From positions 1 through 64,000 of the IMG/VR virus record IMGVR_UViG_3300005529_000001: 64,000 nt of DNA. One strand, 5' to 3'. The first letter of the stretch is position 1. Each line of letters begins with the position of its first letter. The translations under genes and the position numbers were made by a program. The notes below the pieces were generated by a model. The model was given only the letters and a program-made list of their open reading frames with translations, had not been told where the DNA came from and did not search any database. This document shows positions 6,884 through 51,887 of this stretch, one piece after another.

Positions 6884-7312
6884 TTAACCCTCTTCTCGTT
6901 TGCACTCATCACGGACCTCCATGAGGATGCGTCCGAGCCAGTTCGAACCCTTCCCGCGGCAAACGCCCCAGAACGTGTCATTCCACCAGTTGCCCTCAAC
7001 GAGCTTTGCATCACCCGTTGCCAGCAACATCGCTCGGAATAACGGGTTCTTGAACTTCTCCTGGACGAGCTGGCGCATCAGAGCGACTTTTGTCGATTCC
7101 CAATCACGGGGGAGCGAAGCTGCCTTGCCTAATTTCTTAGCTTCTCCAGGCGTCTTGGCGTTCCTAACCAGCTCGTGCCCACTGCCTTCTTTGCCAAACT
7201 TGAAAGCTTGGTATGCGTGTTCGACTGACGGGTAACGTAGACCGTTGACCCAGATCGATGACTCGTGGAAGTTGCTCAAGAAACCGAAGTCACCCCTGAA
7301 GGAGTCAATCAC
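6884..7312 (-). CDS. NADAR family protein
   Basis: FLSNF...YPSVEHAYQAFK...LVEGNWWNDTFWG...GSNWLGRILMEVR. Confidence 0.9.
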   Translation of the reverse strand: MIDSFRGDFGFLSNFHESSIWVNGLRYPSVEHAYQAFKFGKEGSGHELVRNAKTPGEAKKLGKAASLPRDWESTKVALMRQLVQEKFKNPLFRAMLLATGDAKLVEGNWWNDTFWGVCRGKGSNWLGRILMEVRDECKREEG

Positions 7313-7982
7313 CGTCTCCGAGATCAAAGTCTCTGATGTCCGCGGGAGGGTCGGGAGCTGGGGTTGCTGATGGTCCACCTTCGTTGATGCTTCGTTTGAT
7401 GGCAGCGATGAGTTCTTCGGTTTGTCGTTGTTGCTCACGTTCGTCCTCCGGGATGATGTGATTGATCGCGTAATAGAAGAGTGAACTGAAACCGGGAGCG
7501 TACTCTTCGAGCTCCGCTTCGAAGTAATTGCAACGCTTCAGAGCAGCTGCGGCTTCACGTGGGTTGCCCAAGTCAAACCTGACCAATGCAGGTTGGCATC
7601 GCTTGATAACTCGCCAGTATGCCGCGGCAGCATCATCAAACGCGTAAAACGCGCGGTACCAGTGCTTGTCACCCTTGTTGAAGTAGGTGGGTTGGTCTAC
7701 AGATGTCGGCCCAACGTTGCCCAAGTTGTGGTTGTATGATGCTCGCCCAGCTGCGTTCTCAAACGCTACCTGACCCCAGGCCATCGCAAGACGGTTCTTG
7801 CTGGGGTAGCTGCCAAAAACTTTCAGGTGACCGTCACGCAACGCTTGCAGCAGCTCCAGTTGAGTTAGTGGCGTCTTCACCGTTTCTACGTGTTCTCGCT
7901 TGGGTGGCTCCGCTTGTGCAGATCCGAGAGTGCAGCTGAACACAACAGTGATCAACGCGAAGAGCTTCTTCGCCCGGGACAT
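7305..7982 (-). CDS. secreted glucosaminidase/lysozyme-like (GH73-like) protein
   Basis: signal peptide; QVAFEN...NHNLGNV...YRAF...Y pattern. Confidence 0.5.
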   Translation of the reverse strand: MSRAKKLFALITVVFSCTLGSAQAEPPKREHVETVKTPLTQLELLQALRDGHLKVFGSYPSKNRLAMAWGQVAFENAAGRASYNHNLGNVGPTSVDQPTYFNKGDKHWYRAFYAFDDAAAAYWRVIKRCQPALVRFDLGNPREAAAALKRCNYFEAELEEYAPGFSSLFYYAINHIIPEDEREQQRQTEELIAAIKRSINEGGPSATPAPDPPADIRDFDLGDGD

Positions 7983-7999
7983 TGACTCAATCTACTAAG

Positions 8000-8572
8000 T
8001 CAGTCCCGCGTTGTTTCGTCACTTTCACCTGTACATTGTCCTGCAAGCGGGCACGCCGGTAGTTCACAGGTTCCCGTGTTTGGAGAATTGATGTCATCAG
8101 ATGAGGTACACAGCTTCCAAGGCAGCCCAGCCTTGACAACGCGTTTGAGCATGTCAGCAGTCCCACGTGATTCAGCGATGTTGTTGTGAAACGCTAGGAC
8201 CAGATCAATGGGCTCTTCAGGCTTGTTTTCTTCATCAAGCATCTGTTGGTTCCTGATCGGACCCGCTGCACGCTTGTGTTTGGTCCAGTCAGCTGGGTAT
8301 GGCCTGACTTCAAACATGAGTGCTTCAGCAACAGCGGCACAGATGATGTCAGCGCCGACACATGCACCGTGCACGAGGATGGTTCCAGGCCTGAAGCCTT
8401 TCAGCTCTTCAACGACACGGGTGATGTCATTCCAGTTCCTGTCACCAGTGACCAAGATCTTACGAACCTGTTTCTCTGACGGCAGCTTGCGACGTTCTTC
8501 GTCATCACGACGGTCATGGTAACGTCTGTCAGGCTTGTTACGCCTGATCTCGCCAGTCCTTTGCCGAGCCAT
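8000..8572 (-). CDS. SLOG-superfamily (DUF2493-like) protein
   Basis: ILVTGDR...LVHGACVGAD...YPADW...AAGPIRNQQML. Confidence 0.8.
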   Translation of the reverse strand: MARQRTGEIRRNKPDRRYHDRRDDEERRKLPSEKQVRKILVTGDRNWNDITRVVEELKGFRPGTILVHGACVGADIICAAVAEALMFEVRPYPADWTKHKRAAGPIRNQQMLDEENKPEEPIDLVLAFHNNIAESRGTADMLKRVVKAGLPWKLCTSSDDINSPNTGTCELPACPLAGQCTGESDETTRD

Positions 8573-8928: not shown

Positions 8929-9519
8929 TCACTCCCAGTCACCATTGTACCACCTAGACAGCCTGCTTTTCACGCCCGTTCGGTGATCAGTGACCTGGTC
9001 ATCTTGGGTGCGATACGTGCGAACCTTGTCGCCACGTTGGCCCGTGCCAACTTGCTGTTTACGATCAGTTTCTTTGGCGGTTCGTAATCGCTCTCTGTCA
9101 GCTTCATAGAGTCGAGCTGCAAGGACTTTCATCGCCATCGCTTTGTTTTGGCTTTGGCTTCGTTCATTGTCGATACGAACTTGTAACCCAGTCAACTTGT
9201 GAGTGACAACAACGCAGCTCTCGGTCTTGTTACGTTTCTGGCCACCCGGACCAGATCCGCGGACAGTCTCGATGAGAACGTCCTGGTACGTCAGGGGTTG
9301 GCCACTGACAAAATCAGGATCAAAGACAGCAACGGTTACCGTTGACGTCTGGACCCGACCACGTTTTTCAGTGGGTGGGATCCGTTGCCACCGGTGACCG
9401 CCGCTCTCGTTACAGAACGTCTGTTTGGCTCCTGCACCAGTGAAAGCGGCGATGACCAAACCTGGACGTTCGTCGATTAGTTCGATTTCAAAGACACCTC
9501 CGTGCTGCCACATTGGCAT
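8929..9519 (-). CDS. peptide chain release factor-like protein (RF1-type, N-terminally truncated)
   Basis: ESGGHRWQRIPPTEKRGRVQTST (PxT), GPGGQKRNKT (GGQ), RSQSQNK, RTY. Confidence 0.9.
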   Translation of the reverse strand: MPMWQHGGVFEIELIDERPGLVIAAFTGAGAKQTFCNESGGHRWQRIPPTEKRGRVQTSTVTVAVFDPDFVSGQPLTYQDVLIETVRGSGPGGQKRNKTESCVVVTHKLTGLQVRIDNERSQSQNKAMAMKVLAARLYEADRERLRTAKETDRKQQVGTGQRGDKVRTYRTQDDQVTDHRTGVKSRLSRWYNGDWE

Positions 9520-9566: not shown

Positions 9567-10073
9567 TCAGCGGCTCTGATCTCGAGGATGACCGTCTCCA
9601 TTGTCTGTCTCCCCAGCGACCGCTCCGAAGTGCTCGTCCAGGATCATCCTGTAGACACGCCGGTTGAGACCGCTGTGTTGTTTGAAAAACTCGTTATCGT
9701 CTCCCGCGAAGATCTTGAGCAATGCGCTCGCGACGCCGGGAGACCTGCTCAGGCCTGCATCACAGTGAATGATGATCCGGCTTGCGATGGGGTGAGCCGC
9801 AACAAAAGCGAGGATCGCTTTCGCGTGGTGCGGCTGGAACATCAATCGCTCGACGTCTTCTCTGACAACACGTTCAGGTTGTGTTCCACCAACCCGAGTG
9901 TCCCAGACACGATCGATGTCGTAGAACTGGAGCTGCAAGACGCCCAAGGTGTTGCTGTTGGTCGGGAGCCTAGCGGGTCCGTCTTCTTTGGGGGTGCTGA
10001 TTGAGATGAAAACGTGCGGAACCTTGTGTTCCACGGTCTCTGCAAGCTGTCTGTTATAAACGATGACGTCCAT
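9567..10073 (-). CDS. Cys-based (tyrosine/dual-specificity) phosphatase-like protein
   Basis: HCDAGLSRS CX5R loop; FYDID acid loop. Confidence 0.8.
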   Translation of the reverse strand: MDVIVYNRQLAETVEHKVPHVFISISTPKEDGPARLPTNSNTLGVLQLQFYDIDRVWDTRVGGTQPERVVREDVERLMFQPHHAKAILAFVAAHPIASRIIIHCDAGLSRSPGVASALLKIFAGDDNEFFKQHSGLNRRVYRMILDEHFGAVAGETDNGDGHPRDQSR

Positions 10074-11025: not shown

Positions 11026-11029
11026 TCGA

Positions 11030-11384
11030 GGGAGGAGGGCCGATAAGCCGGGTTCTGTCGTTGGGCGATCATTCCTCTGGGATGCATGTTGCCATGCACC
11101 TCAAGCAGCAACCCGGGAACATCGGGCGAGCAGCCCTCAACCGTTCCCTGTTTGCCTTGCTGCGGATGGGGTTTGCCACAAGGGACTGTCACCAGCCCTG
11201 TCGGGGTCTCTTACACCTCGGTTTCGCCCTTGCCTGATCGAGGGGTTGTTTCCCCAAGCCATCGGCGGTCTGTTTTCTGTTGCACTGTTCCGTCGCGTCG
11301 CCGCGCCTGGCCGTTAGCCAGCATCCTGCTCTGTGCAGCCCGGACTTTCCTCTGCATGAATGCAGCGATTCGCCTGGCCTTCCC
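11030..11384 (-). ncRNA. rnpB: RNase P RNA, type A
   Basis: GAGGAAAGTCCGGGC, AGTGCAACAGAAA, ACAGAACCCGGCTTATCGGCC hallmark segments. Confidence 0.97.
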
Positions 11385-11385
11385 A

Positions 11386-11472: not shown

Positions 11473-11522
11473 GTTGGGGGTGAATCCGGTTACCTCACCC
11501 AGGGGTATTGCTACGCCGGTTG

Positions 11523-11876
11523 TTACACGTCCACGGCAATTTTCATGGCCTTGCCTCGAGCCAGCTGGAGCTTGTTGATGAAGACTAGCATGTTGACCAC
11601 ACCGATGTCGCCCATGGGCCAGCGCACCATCTCGTTCTGTAGCTTCTCTGATAGCTCTTCGCTCAAGCCGGTGTCGGCTCTGTTCCCGTCAACGACGACC
11701 GCGACGTCAATGTCGCTGTCAGCGCGGAAGAAATTCTTGTCGATGACGCTGCCCACGATGTAGACTTCCCGGCATGGGAGACCCAACACATCAGCCGCTG
11801 TGTTCCTGATGAAGCCGGCATTCTGCTTCAGGATCTCGATCGCTTCTTGCCGGTACTCTTCGAGTTCAGGGTCCAT
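11523..11876 (-). CDS. minimal nucleotidyltransferase (Pol beta superfamily)
   Basis: VYIVGSV...DSDIDVAVVV (GS...DxD). Confidence 0.8.
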   Translation of the reverse strand: MDPELEEYRQEAIEILKQNAGFIRNTAADVLGLPCREVYIVGSVIDKNFFRADSDIDVAVVVDGNRADTGLSEELSEKLQNEMVRWPMGDIGVVNMLVFINKLQLARGKAMKIAVDV

Positions 11877-11965: not shown

Positions 11966-12190
11966 TCATCCGAGCGAGTCTCTGTAAATAGCGCAGTGAT
12001 GAAGGAACTCGTCCTTCGGGGGTGCGCAAGGCTCTGGAACCACCCGCTCGGGTAGCAGGTTCCACAGCTCAGGCACCCACCAACAAAGGTTGTGCCCTTT
12101 CGCATCACGGTGCTGGCGGATGCCAGCGCGCAAGCGCTTGATTTCTTCGATCAGGTCCTCTCGGGACTTGGTTTCGAGATCGTCATCCAT
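11966..12190 (-). CDS. hypothetical protein
   Basis: ATG ORF filling inter-tRNA gap. Confidence 0.6.
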   Translation of the reverse strand: MDDDLETKSREDLIEEIKRLRAGIRQHRDAKGHNLCWWVPELWNLLPERVVPEPCAPPKDEFLHHCAIYRDSLG

Positions 12191-12265
12191 GGTGCCCCCA
12201 GCGGGATTCGAACCCGCGTTTTCTGGGTGAAGGCCAAACGTCCTGGGCCACTAGACGATGGGGGC
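12190..12265 (-). tRNA. trnE: tRNA-Glu(TTC)
   Basis: Glu-type D arm; loop CCTTCAC (C33). Confidence 0.85.
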
Positions 12266-12339
12266 GTGCATGTGTTGAGGTTCTACGGTGCACAACGTAG
12301 CTCGCTTTTGGCATAAAGCCTAAGGATCAATCCAGCACA

Positions 12340-12416
12340 TGGGGTGTCCGACGGGATTCGAACCCGCGTAAGTACGGTCACAGCGTACCCCCTGAGGCCA
12401 CTCGGGTACGGACACC
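12340..12416 (-). tRNA. trnH: tRNA-His(GTG)
   Basis: G-1:C73; GTACG-CTGTGAC-CGTAC. Confidence 0.92.
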
Positions 12417-12592
12417 ATGCGTGCCCGTTTGGGCACAACGTTCAGTTCTTGGTTGATTTCTTGTTATCTTTGTGGTGCTTGTCATGGTGGTTCTTGTAGA
12501 GAACCGCACCGGCGATGACAGCGATCACGATTGCAGCGAGCTTGAGCTTGTTCTTCATTTTCATATCGTACACCGTGTTGCACCAAAGTGCA

Positions 12593-12667
12593 AGGAGCTG
12601 AGGAAGGGACTTGAACCCTCAATCGCCTGCTTACAAGACAGGAGCATTGCCATTATGCTACCTCAGC
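12593..12667 (-). tRNA. trnT: tRNA-Thr(TGT)
   Basis: CCTGT-CTTGTAA-GCAGG. Confidence 0.9.
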
Positions 12668-12670
12668 AAA

Positions 12671-12764
12671 ACCCGTTCACCTGCTGCCCTGGAGTTGAAC
12701 TCAGGCCCTCCCGCTTGGACGGCGGGCGTGCGACCGTTACACTTGCACATGTGGTTACTTGGAT
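12671..12764 (-). ncRNA. AGUA/GAA module copy G carrying a degenerate tRNA body (loop CGTCCAA)
   Basis: AUCC-A-AGUA-ACC...GGU-GAA-C-GGGU; CCCGC/GCGGG arm plus TTCAACT T-loop. Confidence 0.7.
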
Positions 12765-12850
12765 GGTGATCTCCGTGGGACTCGAACCCACACGCCCTTG
12801 CGGGCACCGGATTTTAAATCCAGCGCGTATGCCGATTTCGCCAGGAGACC
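12764..12850 (-). tRNA. trnL: tRNA-Leu(TAA)
   Basis: CTGGA-TTTAAAA-TCCGG. Confidence 0.92.
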
Positions 12851-12851
12851 G

Positions 12852-12926
12852 TGGAGCGAGCGGCGGGATTCGAACCCGCGTTTCCAGGCTGGCGACCTGG
12901 CACATGTGCCTCTCTGTCACACTCGC
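12852..12926 (-). tRNA. trnG: tRNA-Gly(GCC), second copy
   Basis: CCAGG-TCGCCAG-CCTGG (C33), U73. Confidence 0.85.
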
Positions 12927-12930
12927 ATTT

Positions 12931-13040
12931 GCTTTCACCTTCAAGGAATTGAACCTCCACCTCCCAGCTTCGCGCCAGGTGTTCTCCCATTAAACTACAG
13001 TTAGCTTCTCAGCCAACTGGGAACTGGTTACTCACGGAGC
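12931..13040 (-). ncRNA. AGUA/GAA module copy H carrying a tRNA body lacking the 3' acceptor strand
   Basis: AGUA-ACC...D-arm TAGTTTAATGGGAGAA, loop CGCGAAG, GGTTCAATTCC, then GGU-GAA. Confidence 0.65.
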
Positions 13041-13110
13041 TGGCCACGGGAGTCGAACCCGTCATCTCGTCCGTACCAAGGACGCGTGTTCCCACGCCTA
13101 CTCGGCCAGC
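13035..13110 (-). tRNA. trnT: tRNA-Thr(GGT)
   Basis: CGTCC-TTGGTAC-GGACG. Confidence 0.88.
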
Positions 13111-13113
13111 AAT

Positions 13114-13234
13114 CTTCGTTCACCTGCGTCGAAAGGGACTCGAACCCTTACCCAAGCTCAACACTTGGAAACCGGTTTTGTGCCGGCCGCGTATGCCTGT
13201 TTTTCCGCCATCGACCTATGTTGGTTACTGGAAG
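13114..13234 (-). ncRNA. AGUA/GAA module copy I carrying a CCA-less tRNA-Leu(CAA)-like body
   Basis: CUUC-C-AGUA-ACC...GGU-GAA-C-GAAG; GCCGG-CACAAAA-CCGGT, long variable arm, GGTTCGAGTCC. Confidence 0.72.
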
Positions 13235-13310
13235 GGAGTCGACGGCAGGATTCGGACCTGCGAATACCTGGGTTGCAGCCAGGCCCCTTGAACCGCTTGG
13301 GTACGTCGAC
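13234..13310 (-). tRNA. trnC: tRNA-Cys(GCA)
   Basis: CCTGG-CTGCAAC-CCAGG, U73. Confidence 0.9.
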
Positions 13311-13311
13311 G

Positions 13312-13650
13312 TCACATGCCGCCGCCCATTCCGTGGCGGCCGTTGTCGTTGTTGCTCTTGTTGTTGTAGTTCACCCCGCGTGCTTTGCCGTAGCTTGGCA
13401 CCGGGGGCTTGCTATCATCGAGATCGTCTTGGAGAGGCTTGTCTTCAGCGTCGTCTCGTGAGTTGGGACCCTTTGGCAACCGGAGGTTGCCCAGGTCAGT
13501 CGGGTGAGTGTCAGCCATCTTGTCGGGCACTCCATAGACGTGCTCGACCTTTTCTTTTGGCCAACCGTAGACTGCCTTTGCAGCCTCCCTGATTGTCTCA
13601 CGGAGCTCACCGAGACGGATCTTCACGTCTGTAAGTATCTCTGTCCCCAC
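13312..13650 (-). CDS. hypothetical protein with VKIRLGELRETIREA motif
   Basis: ORF fills gap between tRNAs; start overlaps tRNA-Phe 3' end. Confidence 0.55.
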   Translation of the reverse strand: MGTEILTDVKIRLGELRETIREAAKAVYGWPKEKVEHVYGVPDKMADTHPTDLGNLRLPKGPNSRDDAEDKPLQDDLDDSKPPVPSYGKARGVNYNNKSNNDNGRHGMGGGM

Positions 13651-13714
13651 GGCCGGACTCGAACCGGCACCTCCTGGGCTTCAACCAGGCGCTCGACCAT
13701 CGAGCTGCAAGGGG
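13641..13714 (-). tRNA. trnF: tRNA-Phe(GAA), acceptor mismatch
   Basis: CCTGG-TTGAAGC-CCAGG. Confidence 0.75.
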
Positions 13715-13788
13715 GTGGCCTGGGTCGGGATCGAACCGACATCTTACGGGTTTCAACCGTACGCTAAGACCACATCAGCTACCAGGCC
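13713..13788 (-). tRNA. trnF: tRNA-Phe(GAA)
   Basis: TACGG-TTGAAAC-CCGTA. Confidence 0.88.
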
Positions 13789-13797
13789 ATGTGTGGT

Positions 13798-13874
13798 TGG
13801 GGTGACCGGTGGGAATCGAACCCACGTTGACGCATTCACAGTGCGCCCTCTGAAGACCTCTCGAGTACGGCCAC
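13798..13874 (-). tRNA. trnH: tRNA-His(GTG), second copy
   Basis: CGCA-CTGTGAA-TGCG, G-1. Confidence 0.85.
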
Positions 13875-13950
13875 AGTCAGAGACCCCGGAATCGAACCGG
13901 GCCTGCGTCTGGCTCCAAACCAGCTAGGGCGCCTCCTCCCCATGTCTCTG
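13875..13950 (-). tRNA. trnP: tRNA-Pro(TGG), atypical D arm
   Basis: C1:G72, CTGG-TTTGGAG-CCAG. Confidence 0.65.
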
Positions 13951-14022
13951 GAGCTGGCGAAGGGATTCGAACCCTCACAGGCCTGCTTACGACGCAGGAG
14001 CCCACCGTTGGGCGACACCAGC
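13949..14022 (-). tRNA. trnT: tRNA-Thr(CGT)
   Basis: CCTGC-GTCGTAA-GCAGG. Confidence 0.88.
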
Positions 14023-14025
14023 AAT

Positions 14026-14142
14026 CACACGATCTGAGGACTCGAACCTCACCTCCCCTTGCATGCCGGGCAACCCGCCCATGTACGATTCGAACGTACC
14101 AACAACTAGACGGGGCACATGCACCAGCGCACCCATCGCGTG
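14026..14142 (-). ncRNA. tRNA-like RNA with two T-arms
   Basis: GTACG-TTCGAAT-CGTAC and TGAGG-TTCGAGT-CCTCA inside an 8-bp terminal helix. Confidence 0.65.
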
Positions 14143-14215
14143 GTCAGGGTGGTGGGACTCGAACCCACGGCCTCGTCCATCCGAGGGACGCCGTCTGCCA
14201 CTGACTTACACCCTG
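14141..14215 (-). tRNA. trnP: tRNA-Pro(CGG)
   Basis: CGTCC-CTCGGAT-GGACG. Confidence 0.9.
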
Positions 14216-14219
14216 AAAT

Positions 14220-14530
14220 CATCGACCGTCCGATCGCCTCGGCGAGGATATCACCCCTCACACCTGCTCACGTCAGTCACGTTGTTCCGTCACAAGGCTC
14301 AGCAGCTAGCTAGGCCGCCTCAACACCCTGGCGGGAGTTTACCCGCATGCGCTGTTGCTCTGATCGCCGTAAGGCAGCGCACCGTCTTTCCCCCGAATAA
14401 GGAACTGTCTGATCGGAGTACGGACGACGTTACGTTTCCGCGTGCATCGGACCTGACCAGCTCCCGTTGCCAGTGCCTTTCCCCGAGCCAGGGATGGGCT
14501 TTCAGCCACGTGACGGTAGGACGGTCGATG
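14220..14530 (-). ncRNA. unassigned ~310-nt structured RNA
   Basis: 12-bp perfect terminal helix CATCGACCGTCC/GGACGGTCGATG plus several internal helices and GNRA-type loops. Confidence 0.65.
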
Positions 14531-14607
14531 GTCAGCGTAAGAGGATTCGAACCTCCGACCTCGTGCACCCCAAGCACGCGCTCTAAACCAGGCTGAGCTA
14601 TACGCTG
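14529..14607 (-). tRNA. trnP: tRNA-Pro(GGG)
   Basis: CGTGC-TTGGGGT-GCACG. Confidence 0.93.
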
Positions 14608-14734
14608 ATACGTTCTTCACAGTCTCCACCTCAGTAGGCGTCAGCCAAACACCGTGAGGTGGGCCGCTCCAGACGCTTCTTCGGGTATTCCCTTAGAGAG
14701 GCGTCAAACCTGAGGAACGCAGAGTCTGTTTGTT

Positions 14735-14810
14735 TCGTGGGAAAGGAGGGACTCGGACCCTCGATCTTCTCCGTGTGAGAGAGCTGTTCTTGCCGCTGAA
14801 CTACATTCCC
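14735..14810 (-). tRNA. trnV: tRNA-Val(CAC)
   Basis: CTCT-CTCACAC-GGAG. Confidence 0.82.
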
Positions 14811-14833
14811 GAAGATTGAAGCCTCCTTGGCTT

Positions 14834-14910
14834 CCGTCGGAGCGGTCGGATTTGAACCGACAACATCTTGCACCCAAAGCAAGTGCACTACCGGATTGTG
14901 CTACGCTCCG
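14834..14910 (-). tRNA. trnP: tRNA-Pro(TGG)
   Basis: CTTGC-TTTGGGT-GCAAG. Confidence 0.92.
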
Positions 14911-15101
14911 TTTTTCTGTCTTCTGCCGGGCGTCTCTGCCGGCTTGCCGTTTTCAACCCCTATGGGGGCACGGCAATCGAAACGGCAGCACTCCTGTGGT
15001 AGACGTGAGGCCGCCGACGCTTGAGCGCCGTGGTTCACTTCTGCCTAATAGGATGCTCGACATCATGACGAATGATCTCGTTTCGTTTGTTCGGCTTTCG
15101 C

Positions 15102-15179
15102 CGGTGACCCTGGGGGGATTCGAACCCGCCATTTCCACCGTGAGAGGGTGGCTGCCTTAGCCGTTAGCAAGACAGGGCC
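15102..15179 (-). tRNA. trnE: tRNA-Glu(CTC)
   Basis: CCACC-CTCTCAC-GGTGG. Confidence 0.88.
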
Positions 15180-15249
15180 GTGTAGAACCATACTCTAGGT
15201 GGTGGTCGCCGCTTGTTTCACAACTTTTTGCACTTTTTTCGTGTGTGAA

Positions 15250-15606
15250 TCAAACGGTCTCTTCAAGGTCATCAAGGATGCCGCCCCATTGCGGGTACAC
15301 AGCGTCGACGTCAACGCCCATCTTCCGGAGCTTTTTCTGGTTGCTCCTGATGACCTGACGAGCCCAACGTTTCATGAACGACTGCGAGTGAGCCGAGCTA
15401 GACTCTGTTGACTGGGCGATGATGACCTTGCCGTTGCTGTCCTTGACGGTTGCTGTCAGCTGCCACGTTGCGCTAAGGAACAACGCAATCGTCTTGTCTT
15501 CGATCTCCAGCGTAGCGCTGCCTGGCATCCTCTTTGTCGAGGGAGGCGGGTCTTCGTCGATCAGATCGTCTAGCTCAAGCTCTTCGAAACTTCCGAACCC
15601 ACTCAT
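15250..15606 (-). CDS. hypothetical protein
   Basis: tiles with neighbours on minus strand. Confidence 0.6.
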   Translation of the reverse strand: MSGFGSFEELELDDLIDEDPPPSTKRMPGSATLEIEDKTIALFLSATWQLTATVKDSNGKVIIAQSTESSSAHSQSFMKRWARQVIRSNQKKLRKMGVDVDAVYPQWGGILDDLEETV

Positions 15607-15624
15607 TGTTGTGACCCTTACGTA

Positions 15625-15888
15625 TCAGTTGATCTGAGCGTAACGGTACCACACTTTTCCCTCATCGGTGCTCCAAACCCGGCTGTGACCGGGACTGGCA
15701 CCGAGTTCAGGTGGGATGTTGGGCCATTCAAGAGCAATAGCCCACCGGTTTTCGGTCGGGACAAAAGCACAGTCAGAGACGATCGCGGTGGCATAGCGTT
15801 GCAGGTTGCCACCGACAACGACACGCTCACCCTTCTGGACGGGCGGGTTCATGTCTTTACGGTACCACTGACAGGCACCATCCTTCAC
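15625..15888 (-). CDS. small SH3/KOW-like protein
   Basis: VQKGERVVV beta pattern. Confidence 0.5.
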   Translation of the reverse strand: MKDGACQWYRKDMNPPVQKGERVVVGGNLQRYATAIVSDCAFVPTENRWAIALEWPNIPPELGASPGHSRVWSTDEGKVWYRYAQIN

Positions 15889-15900
15889 TCGACGTTGCCC

Positions 15901-16152
15901 TCAGACAACTTCAAGGAACGCGCCGAAGGCCCAACCCCCGCCGTGAGGGCCCAACACATAGACGCTACCCCCGTCGCTTCTCTCAATCGCGATGACCAAC
16001 GCAACCTCTCGAGTCTCAAGACGGCTGATGCGCCGGGGCAACACATCACCAGCCATTGGCCGTGCGCCGCCCGGAACGCTGAAAAGGTCTATGGGCTCAT
16101 CGAGCCAGCTGACTGGCTTCACCAGCTGGCCTGCTTTGAAGATCCCGCTCAT
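15901..16152 (-). CDS. small SH3/KOW-like protein
   Basis: FKAGQLVKP. Confidence 0.55.
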   Translation of the reverse strand: MSGIFKAGQLVKPVSWLDEPIDLFSVPGGARPMAGDVLPRRISRLETREVALVIAIERSDGGSVYVLGPHGGGWAFGAFLEVV

Positions 16153-16354
16153 CCTCGTCCTCGAACATCAGATCAAGTAGGTACATCAGGTGTTCCCCGT
16201 TGTCACCGTCGCCTCCCGACTTGAAACAAAAAGAGTCATTACCCTCTTCGTAGTCAAGCTTTTTGATAGCTTCGTAGATCTTGATTGACCTTGGATCGTG
16301 TGGGACCCCGTTCTCCCAACGCTCGTTGATCCTATCTCTCTTCTTTTTGGTCAC
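16097..16354 (-). CDS. hypothetical protein
   Basis: FCFKSGGDGDNGEHLMYLLD; tiles with neighbours. Confidence 0.6.
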   Translation of the reverse strand: MTKKKRDRINERWENGVPHDPRSIKIYEAIKKLDYEEGNDSFCFKSGGDGDNGEHLMYLLDLMFEDEDERDLQSRPAGEASQLAR

Positions 16355-16682
16355 GTTGCCCCCTCAACGATCCGAGCATCCACTCCTCAATGGGTAAGTG
16401 CTGGAGCCAACGCTCTAAGGTTGGGATGAAACCAAGGTCTTCGACGACATGATCTTCACCGATGTCACGAACGCTGACACGTTTGCCATCACTGTTGGTG
16501 ATGTTGTGCCCAAACTGCTGCTCCAACAAGAAGATGCCAAAGCTGGAGTGGAGGATGGCACGGTGGCGCATGTCAGGTAGCGCCGACTTCGTCTGGTCAA
16601 ACCAGTCGTGAAGAGCGACGTAGTCTTCGGGTTTGCCGCCCCACTTCTTTGCCGAGTTTTTGGCGTGTTGCCAGGGCTTCAC
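16332..16682 (-). CDS. conserved phage protein (DUF6915-like)
   Basis: HAKNSAKKWGG...HDWFDQTK...HRAILH...GEDHVVEDLG. Confidence 0.65.
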   Translation of the reverse strand: MKPWQHAKNSAKKWGGKPEDYVALHDWFDQTKSALPDMRHRAILHSSFGIFLLEQQFGHNITNSDGKRVSVRDIGEDHVVEDLGFIPTLERWLQHLPIEEWMLGSLRGQRDQKEER

Positions 16683-35713: not shown

Positions 35714-35785
35714 TGGTTGCTCCGACTGGACTCGAACCAGTGGCCCCCGCTCCATGGTAACGGGTGTCCGCCGATATGCGGAGCA
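35714..35785 (-). tRNA. atypical tRNA-like RNA, reduced D arm, CAT centred in loop
   Basis: 7-bp acceptor plus ACCA, canonical T arm, CCCGTT-ACCATGG-AGCGGG. Confidence 0.55.
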
Positions 35786-35787
35786 AT

Positions 35788-35883
35788 GCGTCATGTCGAA
35801 CGGAATCGAACCGTTGCCCGGGTAGCAGCCGCGAGCCTTCACAGGATTCTGTGTTTTTCCCAGTGCTTTCCTCGAACGACATG
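35788..35883 (-). ncRNA. tRNA-like RNA with 4-nt anticodon loop
   Basis: CATGTCG/CGACATG acceptor, CACAG-AATC-CTGTG, T arm AACGG-TTCGATT-CCGTT. Confidence 0.55.
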
Positions 35884-36780: not shown

Positions 36781-36856
36781 TGGCAGCGGGGGATGGAGTT
36801 GGACCACCATTTCCAAGCCTTAGACGCCTGGCGACTTGCTGTTAGTCGACCCCGCT
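36781..36856 (-). tRNA. atypical tRNA with CUA (amber) anticodon, 6-bp anticodon stem
   Basis: CCAGGC-GTCTAAG-GCTTGG; G73-CCA; D loop lacks GG; T loop TCCAACT. Confidence 0.55.
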
Positions 36857-37709: not shown

Positions 37710-37781
37710 TGGTGGAAAGGGCTGGACTCGTCCAGCACTTCCGGGTCAAGAACCCGGCGCTCTGCATTGAGCTACCTCTCC
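37710..37781 (-). tRNA. trnK: tRNA-Lys(CTT), 6-nt T loop
   Basis: CCGGG-TTCTTGA-CCCGG; GCTGG-ACGAGT-CCAGC. Confidence 0.6.
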
Positions 37782-50242: not shown

Positions 50243-50974
50243 TTAGCGCGCGAGCTCTTTCCACCGGGTCTCAAGAAATCGAGCGTAAGGCAATCCCGCG
50301 AGACCGTAAGAGCCAACAGCGTACGCGTCTGTCGCCTCGACCAGCAACGTCTCACCCTGCGCGGTGACGCCCATGTCGAGGCAGAACGCAGCATTCATCT
50401 TGCCCTTGCAACACTTGAGTGCTTTGTTATAGGTGCTCTTGTTGAGCGAGGTGAACGCGTCACCGCGGTAGTGCCGGACGCCGACGGGCTGGTCGTGCTT
50501 GAAGAAGCAACGGTATTCGCTCACAAACTCGATCTCATCGCTGACAAAGCAGGGAGTCTCTTCCGGGTATGCAGCAACCGCAAGCCTCGATCGCGGGTCA
50601 AGCGGATCAAAGACGAAACCCCCGAACAGCTTCTGTTGGACGGGCTTGACGAACTTGCGAGCGACAAGGCTCCTGACTCCTGCCAACGTCATGCGCTCGA
50701 TCTTCCGTCCCAACATCCAGTCGAGGTGTTCGGGATAATCAACGGGTGTTGGCACCGGTTTGCCTAGCAACTTCAATGCATCCCAGACGTCACCCAGGTT
50801 GCCGCAGACGATGACACTCGGGCCGAGGTCAGGCATGTTCTCAAGGTTCAGGTCACCGAACCCGTAGAACGGGACCACAGGGATCCCCTGGATGTGGAAG
50901 CCCTCGGCCGCAGCATAGGTGTTGGCGTTGTCCGGGATGTTCTCACGGAAACGGATGTAAGCCTTGTCAAGCAT
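50243..50974 (-). CDS. ATP-grasp domain protein (DUF4343/R2K-like)
   Basis: FVKP..QKLF, SEYRCF, LDMG, LLVE. Confidence 0.8.
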   Translation of the reverse strand: MLDKAYIRFRENIPDNANTYAAAEGFHIQGIPVVPFYGFGDLNLENMPDLGPSVIVCGNLGDVWDALKLLGKPVPTPVDYPEHLDWMLGRKIERMTLAGVRSLVARKFVKPVQQKLFGGFVFDPLDPRSRLAVAAYPEETPCFVSDEIEFVSEYRCFFKHDQPVGVRHYRGDAFTSLNKSTYNKALKCCKGKMNAAFCLDMGVTAQGETLLVEATDAYAVGSYGLAGLPYARFLETRWKELAR

Positions 50975-51887
50975 TTGCGTGCTGCTCCACGAGCTTCAAA
51001 CCCTCAGCGACATAGTAATCAACAGGCTGGTCTTTCTGAAGGAGACCCGCCTTCATCATCTCTTCCAACTCGTCTCTGACCGCGTTGCACCACGACCCAG
51101 GTTTGGTCGCCACCTTCGACAAGATGATTCCCATCGTGCCCTTCGGCAGCTTGGGCGAGTTGTCATCAGCGTAGACCTGCTTGACCCTGACTTCTAGTTC
51201 AGCAGCACGAGCGAGTGCCCGAGCGCGCTTGTCAGGACGCTTGGTCGTCAGGTCAGCGCGGGACAGCGCCATCAGCCTCTCAAAGTTGCGGACGTCACCG
51301 ATGTCGACGAGCAGTCTCCTGACCCCTGAGTCACCCCACGACTTCTTGTAAGCCGCGGGTCGGAGGTGGTTCAGCACCAGAGCCCTGACGGTCGTGAACA
51401 AGCTGTGGTCGTTTCTGAACAGGTCAAGCCGGTGATCGATGCGATCCAACATCCTTGCCCCGACAACGTCATGCTGGTGGAACGTCACCCGACCATTGAC
51501 GAATGCACGCGTCCGAGCCTTGCCGATGTCATGCATCAACGCGCCCCATCGCAGTTCAAGCTGAGGTGGCACCCCAGCGACGACCTGCTTGGTGTGATCC
51601 CAAACGTCCTTGTGAAGTGCCGAACGCGGGTCTTCACCCAAACCCTTCATCTCCCCGATCTCGGGGAATAACGCTTCGAGACAGCCCGTCTTCAGCAACA
51701 GCTCAAGCCCATCAGCTGGGCGTGAGCCGCAGAGGATCTGATCAAGGAGCTTGCGGACGGTCAGCGGGTTGCGACGCCACAGGTCTTCGAACTCACCGGG
51801 AGAAAAGACTCGTGGGACAAACAAATCATCAGGAGCGCCCGTGTTGGAGCCCCTAACACACAACTCTAGGAGTTCGATCGGATCCAT
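50967..51887 (-). CDS. HD-domain protein resembling the C-terminal half of CCA-adding enzyme
   Basis: L...G.L..LFPE, HKDVWDHT, ALMHDIGK, F..H..VGA, NHLR, VRRL, LSRAD; no N-terminal DxD head. Confidence 0.85.
   Translation of the reverse strand: MDPIELLELCVRGSNTGAPDDLFVPRVFSPGEFEDLWRRNPLTVRKLLDQILCGSRPADGLELLLKTGCLEALFPEIGEMKGLGEDPRSALHKDVWDHTKQVVAGVPPQLELRWGALMHDIGKARTRAFVNGRVTFHQHDVVGARMLDRIDHRLDLFRNDHSLFTTVRALVLNHLRPAAYKKSWGDSGVRRLLVDIGDVRNFERLMALSRADLTTKRPDKRARALARAAELEVRVKQVYADDNSPKLPKGTMGIILSKVATKPGSWCNAVRDELEEMMKAGLLQKDQPVDYYVAEGLKLVEQHANA

What the first reader, a model, noticed from the sequence alone, without database searches (positions are those of the whole stretch)
14220..14530. 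Unassigned ~310-nt highly structured RNA between two tRNA-Pro genes
Seen on the minus strand: a perfect 12-bp terminal helix, long-range pairs GTCACGT/ACGTGAC, CATCCCTGG/CCAGGGTG and AGCTGG/CTAGCT, and hairpins GGCT-GAAA-GCC, GCGCTG/CAGCGC, GCGGG-TAAACT-CCCGC and GAGG/CCTC. A possible pseudoknot is AAGGC/GCCTT. There is no convincing ORF. Short words echo RNase P RNA (GGAAAG, GCAACAG, GGTAAACTCC) but not in the canonical order, so I do not assign it. It may be a novel large ncRNA or ribozyme hosted in the tRNA array, as GOLLD RNAs are.
Basis: partly seen in the sequence, partly recalled or inferred. Interest (0 to 1): 0.75.

Follow-up and report, generated by a model that had tools for sequence, protein, structure and literature searches.

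The report
New structured RNA in phage tRNA array
A conserved, roughly 310-base folded non-coding RNA that matches no catalogued RNA family sits wedged between transfer-RNA genes of a 369-kb soil jumbo phage and its relatives, adding a third, smaller example to the unexplained "ornate" RNAs that phages carry in their tRNA islands.

Summary
Window 14216-14528 (minus strand) lies between tRNA-Pro(GGG) and tRNA-Pro(CGG) in a 55-tRNA array of a 369,475-bp jumbo phage with terminal repeats.

It has no Rfam 15 match, even at E<=10, in this copy or in four homologs. No reading frame is conserved.

I found six further homologs in metagenomic phage contigs. All lie in tRNA arrays, and the six with an intact 5' end start at the 3' end of a tRNA.

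Their alignment supports a 12-helix fold. 98.1% of cells pair, and 28 pairs carry compensatory changes, against 2-8 in slid controls.

Its four long-range pairings and the GGCT-GAAA-GCC hairpin do not. The RNase P "echo" is at chance level, and a full RNase P RNA lies 3 kb away.

Soil metatranscriptomes contain the RNA: a 234-nt contig at 96% identity, while neighbouring non-tRNA stretches have zero depth.

Best reading: a new family of stable non-coding RNA, co-transcribed with the tRNAs and cut out by tRNA-end processing. It works as a folded particle. An invariant palindromic loop (UAGCUA) either pairs with an invariant joiner or mediates dimerisation.

Its function is unknown. It occupies the same genomic niche as GOLLD and ROOL but is not homologous to either.

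The parts
14216..14531 (-). The whole non-coding RNA unit. The helix-closed core is 14221-14529. Probable transcript ends lie at or just after the CCA of the upstream tRNA and at the RNase P site of the downstream tRNA.
   Evidence: Gap between two tRNAs. No Rfam match. Seven-sequence alignment A3 and its consensus fold. Model R1 finds a single copy in the genome at 278.6 bits.
14512..14529 (-). P1, 5' strand of the 18-bp closing helix. It starts on the last base(s) of the CCA encoded by the upstream tRNA.
   Evidence: 6 of 18 pairs have compensatory changes; 96.6% of cells pair.
14221..14238 (-). P1, 3' strand. It is followed by a 5-nt spacer (GAUUU) and then the next tRNA.
14501..14511 (-). 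J1/2, a near-invariant unpaired segment ACGUGGCUGAA (its first base varies A/U; CGUGGCUGAA is identical in all 7). Its UGGCUG can form 6 pairs with loop L11.
   Evidence: Identical over CGUGGCUGAA in all 7 sequences. It is the only 6-bp candidate between columns that are otherwise unpaired. No covariation is possible because both sides are invariant.
14480..14494 (-). P2 hairpin (UCCCUG/CGGGGA). It is nearly invariant (one pair departs in two sequences), so covariation can neither support nor refute it.
14449..14477 (-). P3 hairpin with internal loops (GGCACUGGCA...CUGGUCAGGUCC). It is almost invariant and is the sequence signature used to find homologs.
14426..14444 (-). 5' strands of the P4-P5-P6 stack, which leads to the inner five-way junction.
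   Evidence: helix 4: 4 compensatory pairs
14269..14291 (-). 3' strands of P6-P5-P4, including the conserved internal loop GAACA.
14384..14425 (-). P7 arm (P7a and P7b).
   Evidence: helices 6 and 7 each have 2 compensatory pairs
14347..14382 (-). P8 arm. Its loop contains the invariant UCAGAGC (14357-14363).
   Evidence: 2 compensatory pairs
14331..14346 (-). P9 hairpin GCGGG-UAAACU-CCCGC, with loop consensus UARANN.
   Evidence: 2 compensatory pairs
14293..14330 (-). P10-P11 arm. The 7-nt loop L11 (14307-14313, CUAGCUA) carries the invariant 6-nt palindrome UAGCUA.
   Evidence: P10 has 3 and P11 has 4 compensatory pairs
14241..14263 (-). P12 hairpin (GUGUGAGGG...UCCUCGCC).
   Evidence: 3 compensatory pairs
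14529..14607 (-). Upstream tRNA-Pro(GGG). Its 3' end defines the 5' end of the RNA.
   Evidence: The same zero-length junction is seen in the 6 homologs with an intact 5' end.
14141..14215 (-). Downstream tRNA-Pro(CGG). RNase P cleavage at its 5' end would create the RNA's 3' end.
11028..11385 (-). Phage-encoded bacterial class A RNase P RNA in the same array. It is a likely contributor to processing of the array transcript and is not part of the RNA itself.
   Evidence: 267 bits, full length; also present in relative G001

Best explanation
The element is a gene for a new family of highly structured non-coding RNA, about 310 nt long, carried in the tRNA array of a clade of uncultured soil jumbo phages.

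Inferred mechanism:
1. It has no promoter or terminator of its own and is transcribed as part of the polycistronic tRNA precursor.
2. It is cut out by the enzymes that mature the flanking tRNAs. 3'-end processing of the upstream tRNA makes its 5' end. RNase P cleavage at the 5' end of the next tRNA makes its 3' end. The RNase P may be the phage's own or the host's.
3. The released molecule is closed by an 18-bp helix that protects it from exonucleases. It folds into two stacked multi-helix junctions with many invariant unpaired bases.
4. It therefore acts in trans as a folded particle rather than through base-pairing like a small regulatory RNA. The invariant palindromic loop UAGCUA either docks on the invariant joiner UGGCUG to lock the fold or forms a symmetric kissing contact between two copies, as seen in OLE and GOLLD.

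Its cellular target is not known. The genomic company (58 tRNAs, tmRNA, RNase P RNA, a release-factor-like gene) points to tRNA metabolism or translation take-over.

Shown: conservation, the fold, absence of coding, position, and presence in RNA libraries. Inferred: co-transcription, the processing route, trans action, and the tertiary or quaternary contact.
For: - Source: the window is part of a 369,475-bp virus record with terminal repeats.
- Location: the gap lies between two tRNAs on the same strand as 55 tRNAs.
- No known family: no Rfam 15 match at E<=10 here or at E<=5 in four homologs.
- Homologs: six more were found, all inside tRNA arrays. In the six copies with an intact 5' end, P1 starts 0 nt after a tRNA, either Pro-GGG or Val-CAC.
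- Fold: the consensus has 91 pairs in 12 helices. 98.1% of cells pair, and 28 pairs carry changes on both sides, against 2-8 in slid controls and 0 of 500 shuffles.
- Not coding: no conserved frame, 1-nt indels, no codon periodicity.
- Selection: 82% identity to G001 with 2 gap columns, higher than most flanking tRNAs (51-84%).
- Co-transcription: no sigma-70-like promoter and no minus-strand terminator in 12000-16500.
- Processing enzyme nearby: a full-length RNase P RNA lies 3 kb downstream in the same array.
- Expression: soil metatranscriptome X5 holds a 234-nt contig at 14267-14497 with 9 differences, while neighbouring non-tRNA stretches have depth 0. Four metatranscriptome runs from three studies hold its 31-mers.
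- Tertiary contact: UAGCUA is invariant in a 7-nt loop, and UGGCUG is its only 6-bp partner among unpaired columns.
- Precedent: palindromic kissing loops (GGCC/GAUC/AGCU) hold OLE and GOLLD multimers together, and GOLLD and ROOL lie near phage tRNA islands (PMC12286853; PMC6582537).
Against: - There are only seven sequences from one phage clade. They are related, so covariation counts overstate the number of independent events.
- P2 and P3 are invariant, or nearly so, and remain untested.
- Expression evidence comes from assembled contigs at low depth (3.9). DNA carry-over is not formally excluded, and no transcript ends were seen.
- In three homologs the next tRNA is 120-850 nt away, so RNase P cannot set the 3' end there without a further step.
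- Relative G011 has the RNA but only an 89-nt remnant of RNase P RNA.
- Relatives G003, G008 and G012 lack the RNA in the sequence held, so it is dispensable for the wider group.
- Neither the L11-J1/2 contact nor the dimer contact can be tested by covariation, because both segments are invariant.
- No function was demonstrated.
Confidence: 0.6

Rival explanations
1. A cis-acting structured spacer. The fold would exist only to insulate neighbouring tRNAs from misfolding, or to guide or pace processing of the long precursor, and the excised piece would have no role of its own.
For: It always lies directly against a tRNA 3' end. It has no promoter or terminator of its own. Some relatives do without it.
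Against: Other spacers in the same array are short and some are poorly conserved (15-56% identity, with many gaps), whereas this one is 82% identical with 2 gap columns. It has twelve helices and long invariant unpaired segments, far more than an insulator needs. It is seen in metatranscriptomes where neighbouring spacers are not.
Confidence: 0.13
2. A self-processing or otherwise catalytic RNA of a new class, for example one that cleaves or ligates itself or acts on tRNAs.
For: The complexity, the two multi-helix junctions and the many invariant unpaired bases are typical of ribozymes. It sits in an RNA-processing context next to a phage RNase P RNA.
Against: No match to any known ribozyme family. 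No joints or read ends that suggest cleavage or circularisation. The junctions with the tRNAs already provide the ends.
Confidence: 0.1
3. A strongly diverged or rearranged copy of a known housekeeping RNA: RNase P RNA, tmRNA, SRP RNA, Y RNA or a group I intron.
For: Short word echoes are present: GGGGAAAGG, GGUAAACUCC and GACGGAACA (RNase P-like), GGUCAGGUCCG (SRP-like) and GGUCCGAUG (Y-RNA-like). These are recollections, used as leads only.
Against: No Rfam hit for any of these at E<=10. Similarity to the phage's own RNase P RNA is no better than to shuffles. The P4-like pseudoknot is not maintained. The genome already has a full RNase P RNA and a tmRNA. There is no Ro60/TROVE gene. The flanking tRNAs are intact, so it is not an intron.
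Confidence: 0.04
4. A small protein-coding gene, or the decayed remnant of tRNA genes or a mobile element, with no function.
For: Mechanical ORFs of 85-177 aa overlap the interval. Decayed tRNA-like pieces exist in other spacers.
Against: All these ORFs run into tRNA genes and none is conserved. The element is conserved better than the tRNAs, with compensatory changes. The tRNA model finds nothing inside it.
Confidence: 0.02

Closest known systems
[quoted passage not shown]
   Same: It is a large, elaborately folded non-coding RNA of unknown function, encoded by phages and prophages. It lies inside or beside tRNA clusters with tRNAs on both sides, and uses conserved palindromic loops for RNA-RNA contacts (PMC12286853; PMC6582537).
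   Different: GOLLD is more than 400-800 nt long; this RNA is about 310 nt. There is no sequence or structure match to the Rfam model, and the helix layout differs. Multimerisation is not shown here.
ROOL RNA (Rumen-Originating, Ornate, Large)
   Same: A phage and prophage RNA, often near tRNA islands, with no known protein partner. It is a complex fold held together by kissing loops.
   Different: No Rfam match. This RNA is smaller, comes from a different environment and phage group, and a nanocage or oligomer is not shown.
Stable 'species 1 and 2' RNAs (rnaC, rnaD) of the phage T4 tRNA cluster (own knowledge, not checked here)
   Same: Non-tRNA stable RNAs of unknown function, encoded among phage tRNA genes and released from the same precursors by tRNA-processing enzymes.
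   Different: The T4 RNAs are shorter (about 120-140 nt) and simpler. No homology was tested or is expected.
Bacterial class A RNase P RNA
   Same: Similar size class, a closing terminal helix, GNRA-like loops and a few shared short words. One genuine copy lies in the same array.
   Different: No model match. There is no P4 pseudoknot, no similarity above chance, and the junction architecture differs.
tRNA-punctuated release of non-tRNA RNAs (tRNA-snoRNA dicistrons; MALAT1/mascRNA; mitochondrial punctuation model) (own knowledge)
   Same: Ends of a non-tRNA RNA are set by RNase P and RNase Z acting on adjoining tRNA(-like) structures.
   Different: Those systems are eukaryotic or organellar. 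Here the idea rests on position only; the ends have not been mapped.

Membership tests
Bacterial RNase P RNA (class A) | Match to the Rfam covariance model at or near its gathering score | tested here: not met
   No RNase P hit at E<=10 on 14100-14650 or at E<=5 in four homologs. The same library finds the genuine copy at 11028-11385 with 267 bits.
Bacterial RNase P RNA (class A) | P4 pseudoknot between CR-I-like and CR-V-like segments | tested here: not met
   The candidate AAGGC/GCCUU has 0 compensatory changes. Pair 56/242 is kept in 1 of 7 sequences, and the 3' segment instead covaries with P10.
Bacterial RNase P RNA (class A) | Sequence similarity to the RNase P RNA of the same genome | tested here: not met
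   Smith-Waterman score 21 against 19.2+-2.4 for shuffles; nhmmer finds no hit.
GOLLD RNA | Match to the Rfam model, with its conserved 3' domain | tested here: not met
GOLLD RNA | Encoded by a phage or prophage next to tRNA genes | tested here: met
ROOL RNA | Match to the Rfam model | tested here: not met
tmRNA | tRNA-like domain plus a tag reading frame | tested here: not met
   ARAGORN and Rfam find none in the interval. The genome's real tmRNA is at 265088-265457.
Group I intron | Rfam match and insertion within a host gene | tested here: not met
   No hit. Both flanking tRNAs are complete.
Y RNA / YrlA | Rfam YrlA match on the element, and a Ro60 (TROVE) partner gene | tested here: not met
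   The weak YrlA hits fall on tRNAs, not on the element. There is no TROVE domain in the phage genome. A host-encoded Ro60 cannot be excluded.
SRP (4.5S) RNA | Domain IV motif in a matching model context | tested here: not met
   Only the word GGUCAGGUCCG is shared. There is no Rfam hit.
Homo-oligomeric ornate RNAs (functional class, not a homology family) | Self-association through symmetric loop-loop contacts | not testable with these tools
   An invariant palindromic loop UAGCUA is present. Complex prediction refuses RNA-only jobs. Native gels, SEC-MALS or cryo-EM are needed.

The most novel reading that the evidence does not exclude
The RNA is the founding member of a new functional class: either an RNA-only dimer or oligomer, or a ribozyme or tRNA-binding RNA. 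Jumbo phages would make it from their tRNA precursor to take over or protect the host's tRNA and translation machinery, for example by sequestering tRNAs or ribosomal factors, or by acting as a decoy for tRNA-targeting defence nucleases.
Probability: 0.25. Interest if true: 0.85.

Novelty: new variant of a known kind. Interest (0 to 1): 0.62.

Why it matters
Large, intricately folded bacterial and phage RNAs without a known function are rare. The few that exist (GOLLD, ROOL, OLE, raiA) have recently proved to form unexpected RNA-only assemblies.

This element adds an unrelated and much smaller example from the same niche, phage tRNA islands, in a clade of uncultured soil jumbo phages that also carry their own RNase P RNA and tmRNA. 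At about 310 nt it is easy to transcribe, probe and image.

It comes with a sharp, testable hypothesis. A 6-nt palindromic loop either forms an internal pseudoknot or forms a dimer. The ends are set by tRNA processing. It could therefore help explain why phages place ornate RNAs among their tRNAs.

Tried and rejected
- Plasmid and cultured-phage collections: BLAST finds no match.
- Exact-pattern scans: the first motif chosen gave nothing. Later motifs returned only the same 3-4 viral contigs. One viral hit (L020) and ten metagenome hits were chance matches in coding DNA. All 11 genome-contig hits were chance.
A 252-position model was used instead.
- Model search of more distant relatives (G002, G003, G004, G008, G012-G015): nothing real. 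The 12.7-bit hit in G003 is spurious, with no tRNA context and 171 model positions skipped.
- RNase P relationship: rejected.
- Y-RNA idea, prompted by GGUCCGA: no TROVE gene.
- SRP, tmRNA and group I intron: no model hits.
- Protein coding: rejected.
- RNA-only dimer prediction: the tool needs a protein chain.
- Literature searches for phage-encoded RNase P RNA, or for a similar element, found nothing directly relevant.
- TAG recoding, suggested by the CTA-anticodon tRNA and the release-factor-like gene: no clear signal.

Full report
WHERE THE WINDOW COMES FROM

The window is the first 64 kb of a 369,475-bp IMG/VR virus record with direct terminal repeats, so it is a complete jumbo phage genome. 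Its ATP-dependent DNA ligase is at most 31% identical to that of any cultured phage. Relatives come from soil and mine metagenomes.

The minus strand of the window carries 55 tRNA genes and a full-length bacterial class A RNase P RNA at 11028-11385 (267 bits). The rest of the genome adds three more tRNAs and a tmRNA. It has no RNase P protein gene.

THE OBSERVATION

The interval 14216-14528 is the gap between tRNA-Pro(GGG) at 14529-14607 and tRNA-Pro(CGG) at 14141-14215. The perfect 12-bp terminal helix is present. On its own, the 313-nt sequence folds only modestly better than shuffles (-133.1 kcal/mol, z = -2.19).

No Rfam 15 family matches, even at E<=10 with permissive filters. The mechanical ORFs across the interval all run into the flanking tRNA genes.

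HOMOLOGS

BLAST against plasmids and cultured phages found nothing. Contigs related through the DNA ligase gave two homologs, in G001 (82% identity) and G005 (77%).

Invariant motifs from that alignment were then used for exact-pattern scans. These added a 309-kb contig (G011) from IMG/VR and three more metagenome contigs, L031, L032 and L025. Other pattern hits were chance matches in coding DNA.

That makes seven distinct sequences. Each lies inside a tRNA array on the tRNA strand. In the six whose 5' end is intact, the first helix begins 0 nt after the 3' end of a tRNA. That tRNA is Pro-GGG in one subclade and Val-CAC in the other. The next tRNA follows after 5-8 nt in four copies, and after about 120-850 nt in three.

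A covariance model of the core (R1) finds exactly one copy in the own genome and one in G011. It finds none in the more distant relatives G002-G004, G008 and G012-G015. The family is therefore narrow and can be lost.

IT IS A STRUCTURED RNA, NOT A GENE FOR A PROTEIN

Every reading frame carries stops in most homologs. Indels are single bases. The 121 variable columns fall 44/36/41 over the three codon positions.

RNAalifold gives 91 pairs in 12 helices. On that structure 98.1% of cells pair, and 28 pairs carry changes on both sides. When the partner columns are slid by 1-3 positions, only 2-8 pairs do so. None of 500 shuffles reaches the observed value. Ten of the 12 helices have at least two compensatory pairs. 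P2 is invariant apart from one pair that departs in two sequences, P3 is almost invariant, and P6 has no compensatory change.

Between the window and G001 the RNA is 82% identical with 2 gap columns. That is better than most neighbouring tRNAs (51-84%) and far better than some spacers (15-56%).

ANATOMY (window coordinates)

- P1 is an 18-bp closing helix: 14512-14529 paired with 14221-14238.
- J1/2 is a joiner, ACGUGGCUGAA; CGUGGCUGAA is invariant and the first base varies A/U.
- P2 and P3 are hairpins.
- P4-P5-P6 is a stack with conserved internal loops.
- The stack leads to an inner junction that carries P7, P8, P9 and the P10-P11 arm. The P8 loop holds the invariant UCAGAGC. The P9 loop is UARANN.
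- P12 is a hairpin before the return strand of P1.
- The 7-nt loop of P11 (14307-14313) holds the invariant palindrome UAGCUA.

Among columns left unpaired by the consensus, the only 6-bp complement is UGGCUG of J1/2 with UAGCUA of L11. Both segments are invariant, so covariation cannot distinguish an internal pseudoknot from a symmetric loop-loop contact between two molecules. The latter kind of contact, with palindromes such as AGCU, holds OLE and GOLLD multimers together (PMC12286853).

The terminal helix and the P8, P9 and P12 hairpins are right. The four long-range pairings have no compensatory change and break at their variable positions. The segments involved pair elsewhere with covariation. 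The GGCT-GAAA-GCC hairpin is absent from three homologs.

The RNase P echoes are not significant. The Smith-Waterman score against the phage's own RNase P RNA is 21, against 19.2+-2.4 for shuffles, and nhmmer finds nothing. I also followed up leads from remembered motifs:
- Y RNA: there is no TROVE gene.
- SRP RNA, tmRNA and group I intron: there are no model hits.

EXPRESSION

The 4.5 kb around the element has no sigma-70-like promoter and no minus-strand terminator. This is consistent with one long precursor.

In a soil metatranscriptome (X5) a 234-nt contig covers 14267-14497 with 9 differences. Non-tRNA neighbours (11488-11781, 12958-13692, 13987-14133) have zero depth. Four metatranscriptome runs from three studies hold 31-mers of the RNA.

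This is contig-level evidence at low depth. It suggests a stable transcript of close relatives but does not prove one, and no ends were seen.

HOW IT MOST LIKELY WORKS

Shown:
- a conserved, covarying, non-coding fold;
- a 5' end that abuts a tRNA 3' end in the six copies with an intact 5' end;
- presence in RNA libraries.

Inferred:
- The RNA is co-transcribed with the tRNAs.
- It is freed by tRNA 3'-end processing upstream and by RNase P downstream. The phage even supplies an RNase P RNA, although G011 keeps the RNA with only a remnant of that gene.
- The 18-bp P1 then protects the ends.
- The two-junction fold, with its many invariant unpaired bases, acts as a particle in trans.
- L11 either closes the fold on J1/2 or links two copies.

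The target is unknown. The surrounding genes include a release-factor-like protein, a NADAR domain, a SLOG domain, a nucleotidyltransferase, a CCA-enzyme-like HD protein and the tmRNA. This company points towards tRNA and translation take-over.

Rivals: a purely cis-acting spacer, a new ribozyme, a diverged known RNA, or a decayed or coding sequence. Each is weighed in its own section of this report.

COMPARISON AND NOVELTY

By niche and character the closest known things are GOLLD and ROOL and, from my own knowledge, the two stable RNAs of the T4 tRNA cluster. The RNA fails the membership test for every family considered. It is best described as a new RNA family of a known kind: ornate phage RNAs of tRNA islands.

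Its small size and its clear structural hypothesis make it a convenient experimental entry into that problem. Its narrow distribution and unknown function limit the score.

Noticed in passing
window 11028-11385 (-); L054 (G001:39985-40339); L055 (G011:262137-262225): The phage carries a full-length bacterial class A RNase P RNA inside its tRNA array (267 bits). Relative G001 has one too (276.6 bits). G011 has only an 89-nt, 21-bit remnant. No RNase P protein (PF00825) is encoded. My literature searches found no report of a phage-encoded RNase P RNA.
   Followed up: partly
own genome G000:C1:265088-265457 (-), outside the window: ARAGORN finds a tmRNA with tag peptide ANDNGFADDVRLAA. Together with 58 tRNAs and the RNase P RNA, the phage therefore carries three classes of translation-related RNA.
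   Followed up: no
window 36781-36856 (-) and 8929-9519 (-): A tRNA with anticodon CTA (an amber suppressor, called 'Pyl' by ARAGORN) and a 196-aa release-factor-like ORF (RF-1 and PCRF domains) both lie in the tRNA region. A stop-to-stop frame comparison gave no clear sign of TAG recoding in the genome.
   Followed up: partly
window 6884-7438, 8000-8572, 9567-10073, 11523-11876 (all -): Small genes are interspersed among the tRNAs: a NADAR domain, a SLOG/YspA domain, a weak DUSP/Rit1-like phosphatase match and a minimal nucleotidyltransferase. These suggest nucleotide- or ADP-ribose-related and tRNA-related functions within the array.
   Followed up: no
window 14911-15102 (-): The 192-nt spacer between tRNA-Glu(CTC) and tRNA-Pro(TGG) is 77% identical to its counterpart in G001, more than many of the tRNAs. 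It could be a second conserved non-tRNA element or a small ORF.
   Followed up: no
window 14023-14140 (-): This 118-nt spacer contains two T-arm-like motifs (GTTCGAATC, GGTTCGAGTCC) but no callable tRNA, and it is absent from G001. It is probably decayed tRNA gene(s). Similar decayed pieces occur in relative L056:3320-3609.
   Followed up: partly
window 35714-35807 (-) and 37713-37781 (-): ARAGORN reports an odd 94-nt 'tRNA-???' with a two-base anticodon. Rfam finds a tRNA at 37713-37781 that ARAGORN misses.
   Followed up: no
L015:1811-2662 (G005) and L056:2537-3244 (G008): Some relatives have 700-850-nt insertions in the array next to the position of the RNA. The one in G008 is AT-rich and looks like an inserted ORF, possibly a homing endonuclease.
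   Followed up: no
window 50967-51887 (-): A 306-aa ORF with HD and poly(A)-polymerase RNA-binding domains, resembling a CCA-adding enzyme. This fits a phage that matures its own tRNAs.
   Followed up: no
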